A stretch of 63,936 nucleotides of DNA, the filler included, from Octopus bimaculoides (Eukaryota), in NCBI RefSeq assembly GCF_001194135.2. It is 9 parts of 8 records of this genome, joined end to end, with 100 filler letters (N's around TTAATTAATTAA, not from the genome) between each part and the next. Parts side by side here need not be neighbours in the genome. Positions count along the whole stretch, not along the records: positions 61,517 to 63,936 come from NC_068984.1; 8 more parts are not named here. One strand, written 5' to 3'. This document shows positions 61,517 to 63,936 of this stretch, one piece after another. Numbering within the stretch: position 1 is the first letter of the stretch; each line of letters opens with the position of its first letter. Under the pieces are notes generated by a model. That model searched no databases, was not told where the DNA came from, and saw only the letters and a list, made by a program, of their open reading frames with translations. Both the position numbers and the translations under genes were made by a program.

Positions 61517-61569
<53 letters not shown>

Positions 61570-61587
61570 TAATATTATTATTATTAT

Positions 61588-61932
61588 CATATTTACTTCT
61601 AATCTGCATGTTTGTTACAGTCACTTGCCGAGACACACCCGGCGTCCTAGGGCGAGTGAAGGATAAGCGATGTTACAGGATGAATGATAGCTCGAGGAGG
61701 GGAAGTGGCAGGGACAGTAGCGAAATATCTTCATGTAATACAACACAGACATTTAAATTGATAGGGTTTTTCTAAGGATGTGGGCAGTATTTGTTAGCAC
61801 AATCTTTTGAATTTGTCTGAGACATGGTTCTCCTGGGATGTTGTTTAGATGTTTCTGACATCCCTTTTTCTTTTATCATACCTAGAACACCTAAAATAAC
61901 AGGAACAGTTCTTACTTTAAGATGCCACATTT
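61588..61932 (-). mobile_element. R4/Dong-like 3' end (third family) in (TAA)n
   Basis: EMWHLKVRTVPVILGVLGMIK...IQKIVLTSTAHILRKTLSI* (after a frameshift) plus UTR; TAA repeats on both sides. Confidence 0.75.
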
Positions 61933-61942
61933 CATTATTATT

Positions 61943-62437
61943 CAGTGAGAGAGCAGCGCATGCCATCAAAGTGATACGAGGGTACAAATATACGAAGCCC
62001 AATATACCCATCATGACTACTCGTCTGATAAGTGTATACCAGGCACATGCATCACGACCATATGTGCGTAACATGGTGATCCCATATCAAGATAAACAGC
62101 ACCTTTCAGGCTGAGTAGCCCATATCACACAAAAGGTCCCCGAATAAGATTTGTTTTCAGGATGATGAACACCCACGTCTCCAGAGGTGAATTATTCAGA
62201 CCTCAAAGAACGCCTCTCAACACATGGCTATCATTCTCCCCACTACTTCTGAGATGCACATTTCGTCAGCCACTAAGAGACATGCTCGACTGGTTAAGAT
62301 CAAACAACTAACAAACAAATCTGTGGCATTGAGCACAATATTTGCTGCAGCCCATCTTTTATACTAAGACAAAAGAATGTACATGATAGCACTTCCAATC
62401 GGTTAAGATCAAAAGTCATGAGAACCACTGCCTGGTA
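61943..62437 (-). mobile_element. (TAA)n-associated non-coding element, near full length
   Basis: Colinear with 63213-63766; TAA repeats on both sides; no ORF or Pol III boxes recognised. Confidence 0.85.
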
Positions 62438-62442
62438 ATTAC

Positions 62443-62521
<79 letters not shown>

Positions 62522-62524
<3 letters not shown>

Positions 62525-62883
62525 TAGTTTTATTTTTATAAGGTGCTTTCACTTCACTACCGAGCGCAGCTCTGTGTGCCTTGGGTATGTACTGTGGTTT
62601 GCTGTGATGCTCTTATGGTTACTGTATTGAAAGTGTTTTGCGTAGGATGTGTGCAGTGCCCAGTAGTGCAATTTTCTGTATGTTATATATATTTGTAAGT
62701 CCTGGTGTTTTTGTTATGTATTTGTCTAAATATTTTTTTATTATACCTAAGGCACCTACTATGATAGGAATTGTTTCTGTTTTAAGATTCCACATTCGAG
62801 TTACCTCTATTTCCAGGTCTTTGTATTTTAGGTCATCCATATATAAAAGGTGGCTGACTGTTTTGCCGTAACATTTGTATCCC
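62522..62883 (-). mobile_element. R4/Dong-like deletion derivative: RT YMDD fragment fused to the 3' end
   Basis: GYKCYGKTVSHLLYMDDLK|YKDLEIEVTRMWNLKTETIPIIVGALG...ILRKTLSIQ*; same family as 20756-21063. Confidence 0.85.
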
Positions 62884-63194
62884 TTTTATAGCAGTTCTAC
62901 TGTGCACTCTATTCCAATTTCCTTTATATTCCCCTTGATGCTTTATGCTACTGTTCCCAAGTACCCAACAATAGCTGGTACTATCTTCACCTTCTTCAGT
63001 TTTCATAGCCGGGCTATTTCGTACTAATGATGGTTGTATTTATCCATATTTTCGCCTTCAATCTTAACTATTCGTGGGTCAAAAAGCATGCAACATCAAT
63101 TATATAGCATATGTGGTACACCTTGTCCACCACCACCAGGTCCGATCTATTATGCTCTAGCACCTGATCTGTTTGGATTGGGAAATCCCAGAGG
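62884..63194 (-). mobile_element. R4/Dong-like endonuclease fragment (fourth family)
   Basis: ILWDFPIQTDQVLEHNRSDLVVVDK...CYIIDVAC..FDPRI...KIVPAIVGYLG; its 5' end abuts (TAA)n. Confidence 0.8.
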
Positions 63195-63212
63195 ATTATT
63201 ATTATTATTATT

Positions 63213-63765
63213 GAGTAAGAGAGCAGCATGCCATCAAAGTGACACTGGGGTGCAATTATACGAAGCCCAATATACCTATCATGACTACCCGTCTGATATG
63301 GGTACACCAGGCACATACATCACAACCATATGTGCGCGACATGGTGATCTTATATAGAGATAAACAGCGCATGATCTTGCAGGTGGAGACCCAGTTAGAA
63401 TTTTCTTCAGGTTGAGTGGCCCATCCCGTTCAAAAGGTCCCTGAATAAGGTTTGTTTCAGGATGATGAACGGAACACCCGTGTTTCCAAAGGTGAATTAT
63501 TCAAACTCCAAGGAATTCTTCTCAACACTTGGCTATGATGCTCCTCCACTACCTCTTCTCGTGATCAGAGATGCGCATATCGTCAGCCACTAAGGGACAT
63601 GCTCAACTGGTTAAGGCCAAACAACTGACAAGAAAATTTGTGGTATTGAGTAGAATATTTGCTGTAGTCCATCTTTTATACCAAGACAAAACAATGTACA
63701 TGGTAACACTTCCAATAAGTTAAGATGAGAAGCCATGAGAGCCACGGCCTGGTATTGCATCAGGG

Positions 63766-63766
<1 letters not shown>
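63213..63766 (-). mobile_element. (TAA)n-associated non-coding element, full length (about 550 bp)
   Basis: Minus strand gccctgatgcaataccaggc...ctttgatggcatgctgctctcttactc, with (AAT)n on both sides. Confidence 0.88.
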
Positions 63767-63824
<58 letters not shown>

Positions 63825-63936
63825 GTAGTAGTAAAGGCAACGACATGCAGCAGACGACTGAAACTCTTTTATTCACTCTGCTGCCAGAAGTATTGGCGTG
63901 TCGGCTAAAATGCCTTGCAGTATTTATTCCTGTTCT

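What the first reader, a model, noticed from the sequence alone, without database searches (positions are those of the whole stretch)
61517..63823. Five co-oriented elements stacked in one (TAA)n array: a microsatellite landing pad
Seen, in order: (TAT)n, Dong-like 3' end 61588-61932, TAT, non-coding element 61943-62437, (TAT)n, Dong-like 62522-62883, Dong-like endonuclease fragment 62884-63194, (TAT)n, non-coding element 63213-63766, (TAT)n. All lie on the minus strand, separated by target repeat except at 62883/62884. At least four families are involved. Inference: each insertion leaves TAA target on both sides, so the array repeatedly re-attracts TAA-specific retrotransposons, as with tandem site-specific elements in rDNA or telomeres. 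A smaller plus-strand cluster occurs at 18.9-23.1 kb.
Basis: partly seen in the sequence, partly recalled or inferred. Interest (0 to 1): 0.72.

Follow-up and report, generated by a model that had tools for sequence, protein, structure and literature searches.

The report
Retrotransposons stacked in a TAA microsatellite
An octopus-type (TAA)n microsatellite has been hit at least five times, always in the same direction, by TAA-specific Dong/R4-type retrotransposons and by a short non-coding element that shares the same target; this is a clean example of known biology, and the short element may not have been described before.

Summary
Read on the minus strand, the piece is (TAA)19 – NC2 – (TAA)6 – EN|D2 – (TAA)28 – NC1 – (TAA)3 – D1 – (TAA)≥24.

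D1, D2 and EN are 5'-truncated 3' ends of three different lineages of one retrotransposon group:
- They keep the C-terminal restriction-like endonuclease and tail region.
- Relatives elsewhere carry a reverse transcriptase upstream and no AP-endonuclease.
- Their closest solved relatives are R2 proteins.
- In 7 of 7 cases with downstream sequence they end in a short UTR followed by sense-strand (TAA)n.

This is the Dong/R4 pattern. TAA specificity has been known for Dong since 1993/2004, and Dong-R4 is already annotated as abundant in octopus genomes. D2 is 90% identical to an Octopus bimaculoides protein.

NC1 and NC2 are two copies (85% identical) of one roughly 555-bp non-coding family. Four further copies found elsewhere show a fixed 3' end followed by (TAA)n, 5' truncations, and TAA on the 5' side in two of the four. 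It behaves as a non-autonomous retroposon that uses TAA arrays. Its partner enzyme is not identified.

A contig from another species shows the same co-oriented stack. Co-orientation follows from the polarity of the target, so it is not an extra signal. Verdict: real, interpretation supported, largely known; modest interest.

The parts
61517..61587 (-). (TAA)n tract, at least 23 units, cut by the edge of the piece; 3' tail or target downstream of D1
   Evidence: TRF; 21/23 perfect units
61588..61933 (-). D1: 5'-truncated Dong/R4-like 3' end. Tail ORF remnant 61933->61756 with one frameshift, then about 165 nt of 3' UTR
   Evidence: tblastn to P0047/P0045/P0048 tails (E 2e-6); translation; junctions
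61934..61942 (-). (TAA)3 spacer between NC1 and D1
61943..62437 (-). NC1: copy of the ~555-bp non-coding retroposon family; lacks about 12 nt at the 5' end and has internal deletions of 11, 5 and 33 nt relative to NC2
   Evidence: alignments A1/A4; no tRNA or Rfam match
62438..62521 (-). (TAA)28 tract between D2 and NC1
   Evidence: TRF
62522..62834 (-). D2: 5'-truncated Dong/R4-like 3' end. Intact tail ORF (within the 73-aa ORF 62619-62840) plus 97 nt of 3' UTR. 90% identical to Octopus bimaculoides A0A0L8I0U5
   Evidence: 83% nucleotide identity to L004
62835..62879 (-). 45 nt with no assignable homology at the EN|D2 junction; the same length as the 15 codons EN lacks
   Evidence: EN = P0048 residues 43-148 of 163
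62880..63194 (-). EN: truncated at both ends, decayed Dong/R4-like fragment covering the restriction-like endonuclease core (…RSD…IIDVA…DKY…) and most of the tail. One frameshift, three in-frame stops, no 3' UTR
   Evidence: tblastn to P0048/P0045 (E 2e-29); the family profile hits the R2 endonuclease domain in PDB
63195..63212 (-). (TAA)6 tract between NC2 and EN
   Evidence: TRF
63213..63766 (-). NC2: full-length copy (554 bp) of the non-coding family. Its 5' end GCCCTGATGCAATACCAGG matches the 5' end of the L009 copy
63767..63824 (-). (TAA)19 tract upstream of NC2; the outer end of the array
   Evidence: TRF; 19/19 perfect units
63825..63936 (.). non-repeat flank, unclassified
   Evidence: no similarity to any element

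Best explanation
A (TAA)n microsatellite in an octopod genome has received at least five separate insertions by target-primed reverse transcription. Three come from different lineages of Dong/R4-type non-LTR retrotransposons: D1, D2 and EN, all 5'-truncated as is usual for such insertions. Two come from one ~555-bp non-coding family, NC1 and NC2.

Inferred mechanism, taken from what is known of R2 and Dong:
1. The element's restriction-like endonuclease nicks the TAA repeat.
2. The RNA, which ends in (UAA)n, pairs with the nicked repeat.
3. Reverse transcription starts there.

The insert therefore always lies in one direction relative to the repeat and keeps TAA repeat on both sides. Each insertion splits the array into two usable targets and may lengthen it. 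The same array can thus be hit again over a long time; the fragments differ in decay, EN being the most decayed and D2 still open.

The NC family has no coding capacity. It most likely borrows the enzyme of a TAA-specific element, with Dong-type as the obvious candidate.

The repeat-free EN|D2 junction is best read as follows. D2 inserted into EN's TAA tail, and 5' joining deleted the upstream repeat and EN's 3' UTR.

What is shown: the anatomy, the homologies, TAA on the 5' flank of most copies and after every Dong-like 3' UTR examined, and the same stack in another genome. What is inferred: the enzymology, the partner of NC, the order of events and the origin of the EN|D2 junction.
For: - The repeat tracts and element limits coincide.
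- The tail-region family is very large (more than 3350 proteins). It lies downstream of a reverse transcriptase domain in L001, L002 and L006.
- The near-full-length relative in L006 has RVT_1 (1e-21) and no AP-endonuclease domain. Its closest solved relatives are R2 proteins (6e-26, against 7e-8 for LINE-1 ORF2p).
- The tail profile aligns to the endonuclease domain of R2 (E 6e-4). A C-x2-C…H-x4-C motif precedes it in P0045, P0047 and P0112.
- All 7 Dong-like tails with downstream sequence have sense (TAA)n 72-169 nt after the aligned tail; none has (TTA)n.
- The 5' flanks are TAA repeat in 11 of 13 evaluable copies.
- L006 shows three co-oriented copies separated by TAA tracts.
- D2 is 90% identical to an O. 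bimaculoides protein.
- NC is dispersed: 19 clusters match it, including seven O. bimaculoides proteins.
- Four further NC copies (L007, L008, L009, L012) share the 3' end next to (AAT)n. Three are 5'-truncated at different points. L009 shares NC2's 5' end with TAA repeat upstream.
- Literature: TAA specificity of Dong (PMC3812793, PMC7998251); Dong-R4 abundant and recently active in Octopus vulgaris (PMC13282606).
Against: - Placement in the R4/Dong clade rests on architecture, target and published octopus annotation. No RT phylogeny with reference Dong or R4 sequences was possible.
- No part of NC resembles the 3' UTRs of D1 or D2 or any Dong-like coding region, so its partner is unproven.
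- Two older NC copies (L008, L012) lack TAA on the 5' side.
- The structure comes from one assembly and was not checked against reads.
- Evidence for a conserved RNA structure in NC is weak: one compensatory pair and a positive covariation term.
Confidence: 0.78

Rival explanations
1. The TAA tracts are only the elements' own 3' tails, as with the (TAA)n tail of the Drosophila I factor. On this reading the elements insert without target preference, and the stack reflects chance clustering or nesting.
For: Every copy carries (TAA)n after its 3' end. Tails templated by RNA are expected. Two old NC copies have no TAA on their 5' side (L008, L012).
Against: Copies truncated at different internal points still have pure TAA repeat directly at the 5' junction: D1, EN, NC1, NC2, L001, L004, L006 a-c, L007 and L009. 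Random insertion would not give this. The protein family carries a restriction-like endonuclease, not an AP-type one. Published work reports TAA as the target (PMC7998251).
Confidence: 0.07
2. The pattern [NC – short TAA – Dong-like – long TAA] occurs twice because a composite unit was duplicated in tandem by unequal crossing-over between TAA tracts, not because of independent insertions.
For: The order NC2–EN/D2 and NC1–D1 repeats. Microsatellite tracts are good substrates for unequal exchange.
Against: NC1 and NC2 are 85% identical. The Dong-like partners are different lineages with unalignable UTRs: D1 against D2 is about 50% in the tail, and EN is 26-28% to both. The 5' ends of NC1 and NC2 differ by 12 nt. 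One duplication cannot give such unequal divergence.
Confidence: 0.07
3. The stack is an assembly artefact: repeat-ended contigs or reads were joined through their TAA overlaps.
For: All joints but one run through low-complexity repeat. No read data were available.
Against: The tracts are short (9-84 bp) and are easily spanned. The EN|D2 joint has no repeat. An equivalent stack exists in a contig of 1.18 Mb labelled 88x from another organism.
Confidence: 0.05
4. NC does not depend on Dong-type elements. It is moved by another LINE with a microsatellite tail (octopus RTE elements have such tails), or it is the long 3' UTR of an unrecognised LINE. It lands in TAA arrays only because its (UAA)n tail pairs there.
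For: NC shows no sequence similarity to the neighbouring Dong-like 3' UTRs. The octopus RTE element is reported to end in a microsatellite (PMC9115989). L008 and L012 lack 5' TAA.
Against: NC2 and the 26%-diverged L009 copy share the same 5' terminus with TAA directly upstream, and NC1 is only 12 nt shorter. This argues for a discrete short element and not for random truncations of a long one. TAA lies on both sides in 4 of 6 loci. Co-residence and co-orientation with Dong-like copies are consistent with shared machinery but do not prove it.
Confidence: 0.3

Closest known systems
Dong (Bombyx mori) and DongAg / DongBg, R4 clade non-LTR retrotransposons specific for (TAA)n
   Same: Reverse transcriptase followed by a CCHC motif and a restriction-like endonuclease, with no AP endonuclease. 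Insertion in (TAA)n in a fixed direction, frequent 5' truncation, and TAA repeat on both sides (PMC3812793, PMC7998251, PMC3774820).
   Different: The window holds only decayed or truncated 3' ends of three lineages. No RT, N-terminal region or 5' ribozyme is present here. Clade placement by RT phylogeny was not done.
Dong-R4 LINE families annotated in octopus genomes (O. bimaculoides consensus; five recently active families and 1129 insertions in O. vulgaris)
   Same: Same host group. D2 is 90% identical to an O. bimaculoides predicted protein. The family type is reported as abundant and recently active (PMC13282606, PMC9115989, PMC8967140).
   Different: Keyword checks of those papers found no mention of TAA-array stacking or of a non-coding TAA-associated partner.
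R2 in 28S rDNA and its non-autonomous SIDE derivatives
   Same: Site-specific element with a restriction-like endonuclease and a multicopy target that is hit repeatedly. Short non-coding parasites use the same target (PMC3414825). The window's tail profile aligns to the R2 endonuclease domain.
   Different: The target here is a microsatellite, not a gene. SIDEs share the 5' ribozyme and 3' UTR with their R2 parent, whereas no such sharing could be shown for NC.
TRAS and SART in Bombyx telomeric (TTAGG)n, and the microsatellite-specific Kibi, Koshi, Waldo and Mino
   Same: Non-LTR elements specific for a simple repeat, fixed in orientation relative to it, and accumulating in arrays (own knowledge; microsatellite-specific families are listed in PMC3812793).
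   Different: TRAS, SART, Waldo and Mino use AP-type endonucleases, and all of these have other repeat targets.

Membership tests
R4/Dong clade (non-LTR retrotransposon with restriction-like endonuclease) | C-terminal CCHC motif plus PD-(D/E)xK restriction-like endonuclease downstream of the RT | tested here: met
   EN keeps …RSD…IIDVA…DKY…, aligned to relatives with RPD…D…K. The family profile hits the R2 endonuclease domain (9nl3, 9dou; E about 6e-4). The CCHC motif is seen in P0045, P0047 and P0112. The window copy itself is broken: one frameshift and three stops.
R4/Dong clade (non-LTR retrotransposon with restriction-like endonuclease) | Reverse transcriptase present and no AP-endonuclease domain | tested here: met
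   Not in the window, where all copies are 5'-truncated. In relatives, RVT_1 lies upstream of the tail in L001 and L006. The near-full-length L006 element has no Exo_endo_phos hit. Its RT is closest to R2 among solved structures.
R4/Dong clade (non-LTR retrotransposon with restriction-like endonuclease) | Insertion into (TAA)n in a fixed orientation (Dong subgroup) | tested here: met
   7 of 7 tails are followed by sense (TAA)n and none by (TTA)n. The 5' flanks are TAA. This matches PMC7998251 and the TAA/Dong junction primer in PMC3774820.
R4/Dong clade (non-LTR retrotransposon with restriction-like endonuclease) | RT phylogeny groups with Dong and R4 and not with R2, NeSL, CRE or HERO | not tested
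   No reference Dong or R4 sequences could be fetched with the tools. The assignment rests on architecture, target and published octopus annotation.
R4/Dong clade (non-LTR retrotransposon with restriction-like endonuclease) | HDV-like ribozyme at the 5' end; divergent N-terminal Myb/SANT-like domain | tested here: inconclusive
   Absent from the window because of truncation. On the 5' end of the L006 element, Rfam gave no ribozyme match and a simple home-made descriptor found nothing. Pfam found nothing in the N-terminal ORFs. These tests are not sensitive enough to exclude either feature.
SINE in the strict sense (for NC) | Head derived from tRNA, 5S or 7SL with an internal Pol III promoter | tested here: not met
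   ARAGORN found no tRNA. Rfam at E<=1 gave only spurious repeat-driven hits far below threshold.
SINE in the strict sense (for NC) | 3' end shared with the partner LINE | tested here: inconclusive
   No similarity to the 3' UTRs of D1 or D2. These are only two of several octopus Dong-R4 families, and the others were not available.
Non-autonomous non-LTR retroposon in the broad sense (for NC) | Non-coding and dispersed in many copies, with a fixed 3' end plus simple-repeat tail and variable 5' truncation | tested here: met
   There is no conserved ORF: the antisense ORF is less conserved at the protein level (about 75%) than the DNA is (85-88%). Nineteen matching clusters include seven O. bimaculoides proteins. 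Six loci share the same 3' end next to (AAT)n, and there are three different 5' truncation points.
SIDE-like internally deleted derivative of a site-specific LINE (for NC) | 5' and 3' ends identical to those of the parent LINE | not testable with these tools
   No full-length octopus Dong-R4 sequence could be obtained. There is no coding similarity to Dong-like N-terminal or tail regions.

The most novel reading that the evidence does not exclude
NC is an undescribed, octopod-specific, non-coding parasite of Dong-R4 elements. It shares their TAA-microsatellite target without sharing their 3' UTR. The enzyme would then need little more than a (UAA)n tail, perhaps with NC's conserved 3' hairpin, to prime on the nicked repeat. 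If so, any RNA ending in (UAA)n could be moved. TAA arrays would act as self-renewing and self-extending landing pads, which could help explain repeat growth in cephalopod genomes.
Probability: 0.3. Interest if true: 0.5.

Novelty: new member of a known kind. Interest (0 to 1): 0.3.

Why it matters
The locus shows compactly how a site-specific retrotransposon and its target evolve together. Every insertion keeps the target intact on both sides, so a harmless microsatellite becomes a long-lived sink that absorbs insertions from several families.

For genome annotators, chains of fragments joined by TAA repeats in cephalopod assemblies need not be mis-joins. They are difficult to assemble and to genotype.

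The non-coding family is the one possibly new item. If it is moved by Dong-type enzymes, it would be a microsatellite-specific counterpart of the R2 SIDE elements. It would also give a simple substrate for testing what a restriction-like-endonuclease retrotransposon needs in its RNA template. That question matters to people who try to use R2-type enzymes for targeted insertion.

Tried and rejected
- Pfam on the three conceptual tail peptides: no hit. The tail region has no Pfam model.
- Rfam on the piece: only spurious repeat-driven CrcZ hits far below threshold. ARAGORN: no tRNA.
- Exact look-up of two window ORFs in public assemblies: not on record, so the source contig could not be recovered.
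- Two scans of JGI metagenome contigs with conserved NC 20-24-mers: no match.
- Full-text search for NC k-mers, for example as microsatellite primers: nothing.
- Similarity between NC and the Dong-like fragments, their UTRs or the loci from other species: none.
- Coding similarity of NC to Dong-like N-terminal or tail regions: none.
- Single-sequence folding of the NC ends and of the D1/D2 UTRs: z-scores from -1.8 to +0.3, not significant. The alignment fold of five NC 3' domains keeps a long hairpin, but with one compensatory pair in that hairpin and a positive covariation term.
- HDV-like ribozyme, by Rfam on the 5' end of the L006 element and by a home-made descriptor on the NC and L006 5' ends: nothing found. 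The descriptor also failed on the element expected to carry one, so the test is uninformative.
- The original Dong paper (PMC309301) is not held.
- Tandem duplication of an [NC–Dong] unit was considered and rejected because the two halves have diverged very unequally.
Full report
**What is in the sequence**

The piece 61517-63936 contains four clean (ATT)n tracts. They lie at 61517-61587, 62438-62521, 63195-63212 and 63767-63824, with 95-100% matches. In register, 21/23, 27/28, 6/6 and 19/19 units are perfect, and there is an (ATT)3 at 61934-61942. On the minus strand these read (AAT)n, that is (TAA)n. Between the tracts lie five blocks whose limits coincide with the tract limits.

**The three coding remnants**

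Minus-strand translation and tblastn with relatives show three remnants:
- D1, 61933->61756: the last ~59 codons of a conserved C-terminal tail (…MWxLK…VPVILGxLG…LxxTAHILRKTLSI*), with one frameshift, followed by about 165 nt of UTR.
- D2, 62834->62625: the same region, intact, within the 73-aa ORF 62619-62840, followed by 97 nt of UTR.
- EN, 63196->62880: the region upstream of that, ILWDFPIQTD…HNRSDLVVVDK…IIDVA…DKY…IVPAIVGYLG…ELL, with one frameshift and three stops. It corresponds to residues 43-148 of the 163-residue relative P0048.

EN and D2 both contain the KY…E…W…P.IVG.LG segment. They are therefore two elements and not one. EN stops 15 codons short of its stop codon and has no UTR. 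D2 homology begins 45 nt further on, and those 45 nt (62835-62879) match nothing.

The three remnants are different lineages. D1 and D2 share about half of their tail residues and have unalignable UTRs. EN is only 26-28% identical to either.

**What family they belong to**

- Pfam has no model for the tail.
- The tail family is huge in public eukaryote-derived assemblies: more than 3350 proteins at E<=1e-5.
- In three contigs from other organisms the tail lies downstream of a reverse transcriptase domain (L001, L002, L006).
- L006 holds a near-full-length element (5849-~9780). Its large ORF has RVT_1 (1e-21) and a weak zf-RVT hit, and its N-terminal ORFs show no AP-endonuclease domain.
- Among solved structures, its RT is closest to R2 proteins (6e-26, against 7e-8 for LINE-1 ORF2p).
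- A profile of the tail region aligns to the restriction-like endonuclease domain of R2 (KPD…D…K…Y; E about 6e-4).
- Longer relatives carry the C-x2-C…H-x4-C motif just upstream.

This is the architecture of non-LTR elements with a restriction-like endonuclease.

**The target**

In all seven cases where sequence downstream of a tail is available, sense-strand (TAA)n starts 72-169 nt after the aligned tail, and (TTA)n never does. Where the 5' junction can be read, the upstream flank is TAA repeat in 11 of 13 copies, truncated at many different points.

RT, restriction-like endonuclease and a (TAA)n target together are the published description of Dong within the R4 clade. It is reported from silkworm, mosquito, snail, cnidarians and an ostracod (PMC3812793, PMC7998251). 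The Dong 5' junction primer in PMC3774820 shows the same polarity.

I could not run an RT phylogeny with reference Dong or R4 sequences. Clade membership is therefore inferred from architecture, target and host annotation.

**The host**

- The D2 ORF is 90% identical to Octopus bimaculoides A0A0L8I0U5, and ten other O. bimaculoides proteins are among the hits. The window is very probably from an octopod.
- Dong-R4 LINEs are already annotated as abundant in cephalopods (PMC8967140).
- A full-length consensus exists for O. bimaculoides (PMC9115989).
- Five recently active families with 1129 insertions are reported for O. vulgaris (PMC13282606).

**The two non-coding blocks**

NC1 (61943-62437) and NC2 (63213-63766) are copies of one family: 85.2% identity over 508 aligned positions, K2P 0.17, with indels of 11, 5 and 33 nt. 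They have no tRNA or Rfam match and no coding similarity to Dong-like proteins. They show no similarity to the neighbouring UTRs.

A short antisense ORF that happens to be open in both copies served as a handle. phmmer against 1.84 billion representatives found 19 clusters. Seven are O. bimaculoides predicted proteins; the rest come from ENA and Logan contigs. So the family is dispersed.

Four further genomic copies could be read:
- L007 (TARA scaffold): a 165-bp 5'-truncated copy with (AAT)4 after its 3' end and (AAT)9 before its 5' end.
- L009-L011 (one contig in three runs): a full-length copy, 74% identical to NC2. It has the same 5' terminus (GCCCTCATGCAGTACCA against GCCCTGATGCAATACCA) directly after (AAT)n, and a degenerate AAT tail.
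- L008 and L012: older 5'-truncated copies with degenerate AAT tails and no TAA on the 5' side.

In all six loci the same terminus …GCTGCTCTCTCAC(T)(G/C) abuts (AAT)n. A fixed 3' end, a simple-repeat tail, variable 5' truncation and a defined full length of about 555 bp are the marks of a non-autonomous non-LTR retroposon. They also fix its orientation as minus in the window.

The best conserved part is the last ~190 nt. It contains a long imperfect hairpin kept in all five aligned copies, but with only one compensatory pair in that hairpin. This is suggestive and no more.

NC is not a SINE in the strict sense, because no Pol III-type head was found. Whether it is an internally deleted Dong derivative like the R2 SIDEs (PMC3414825) cannot be tested without full-length octopus Dong sequences.

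**Is the stacking special?**

The contig L006 (1.18 Mb, labelled 88x, another organism) shows the same arrangement, all on one strand:
- (AAT)38
- a 5'-truncated copy with a 485-aa open ORF
- (ATA)44 and (ATA)7
- a 438-bp non-coding block
- (TAA)17
- a near-full-length element
- (ATA)24
- a short 5'-truncated copy
- (AAT)10

So several co-oriented insertions from different lineages in one TAA array are a recurrent outcome and not a peculiarity of this window. This also makes an assembly artefact less likely.

Because TAA/TTA is a polar target, co-orientation is forced by target specificity and adds no independent information.

**Mechanism (inferred)**

By analogy with R2 and Dong:
1. The endonuclease nicks the repeat.
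2. The (UAA)n-tailed RNA pairs with it.
3. Reverse transcription starts there, and the upstream repeat is rejoined to the often truncated 5' end.

The junctions are compatible with a fixed phase. Upstream flanks mostly end …AAT|, and tails mostly start |AAT or |ATA. Each event leaves two arrays, and the 3' one can be extended from the RNA tail. The target is therefore renewed.

The differing decay indicates hits spread over a long time: EN has three stops and a frameshift, D1 has one frameshift, D2 is intact, and the two NC copies differ by 15%.

For the repeat-free EN|D2 joint, the simplest reading is that D2 inserted into EN's tail and 5' joining deleted the upstream repeat and EN's UTR. Template switching between two RNAs is the alternative. 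A search for the same joint elsewhere in the genome would decide between them.

**Comparison and verdict**

However, it restates the known biology of Dong-type elements in a host where they are already annotated as abundant.

The possibly new item is the NC family, a short non-coding element associated with TAA arrays. The library searches I ran returned no paper describing such a Dong partner, and no NC sequence string occurs in the library. Its partner enzyme remains open.

I rate the finding a new member of a known kind, of modest interest. No step had to be referred.

Noticed in passing
P0047 (protein from an ENA contig, another organism): A 334-aa open ORF joins the Dong-like N-terminal region (…RRKWTSQENKIVMECY…) directly to the CCHC and endonuclease tail, with the whole RT missing. 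It looks like an internally deleted, SIDE-like derivative that has kept an open frame.
   Followed up: no
L004 1-310 (ENA ERZ15185604): A GC-rich ~250-bp block in inverse orientation abuts (TAA)5 directly upstream of a 5'-truncated D2-family copy. From memory it resembles the tRNA-derived octopus SINE, but Rfam gave no match.
   Followed up: partly
L006 5359-5796: A 438-bp non-coding block is enclosed by (ATA)7 and (TAA)17 inside the Dong-like stack of another species. It may be that genome's own non-autonomous TAA-array element. It has no similarity to NC.
   Followed up: partly
window 62835-62879 and the EN|D2 junction: EN and D2 are in the same reading frame across their junction. The 45 unassigned nucleotides equal exactly the 15 codons EN lacks relative to P0048. 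This may be EN's decayed ORF end, so that only its UTR and tail were lost.
   Followed up: partly
window 61943-62437 and 63213-63766, plus strand (antisense of NC): An antisense ORF of NC forms the N-terminus of several O. bimaculoides gene models (A0A0L8FVA6, A0A0L8H821, A0A0L8FX38). These are TE-derived first exons or annotation artefacts.
   Followed up: partly
window 63213-63352 and 61943-62082, minus strand: The 3' domain of NC has a ~48-nt imperfect hairpin (GCCTGGTGTACC…GGTATATTGGGC) kept in five copies from different loci. Covariation support is weak.
   Followed up: partly
window: NC1-(TAA)3-D1 and NC2-(TAA)6-EN: Both NC copies sit directly upstream of a 5'-truncated Dong-like copy with only 3-6 repeat units between. 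The tracts after Dong-like 3' ends are 24-28 units. No explanation was found.
   Followed up: no
L005 661-918 (ENA ERZ23287674): A D2-family copy whose tail ORF ends prematurely (…GALGMIK*) and is followed by unrelated sequence. It is a 3'-truncated or interrupted copy.
   Followed up: no
L006 12786-13422: A 160-bp satellite in four tandem copies lies downstream of the Dong-like stack.
   Followed up: no
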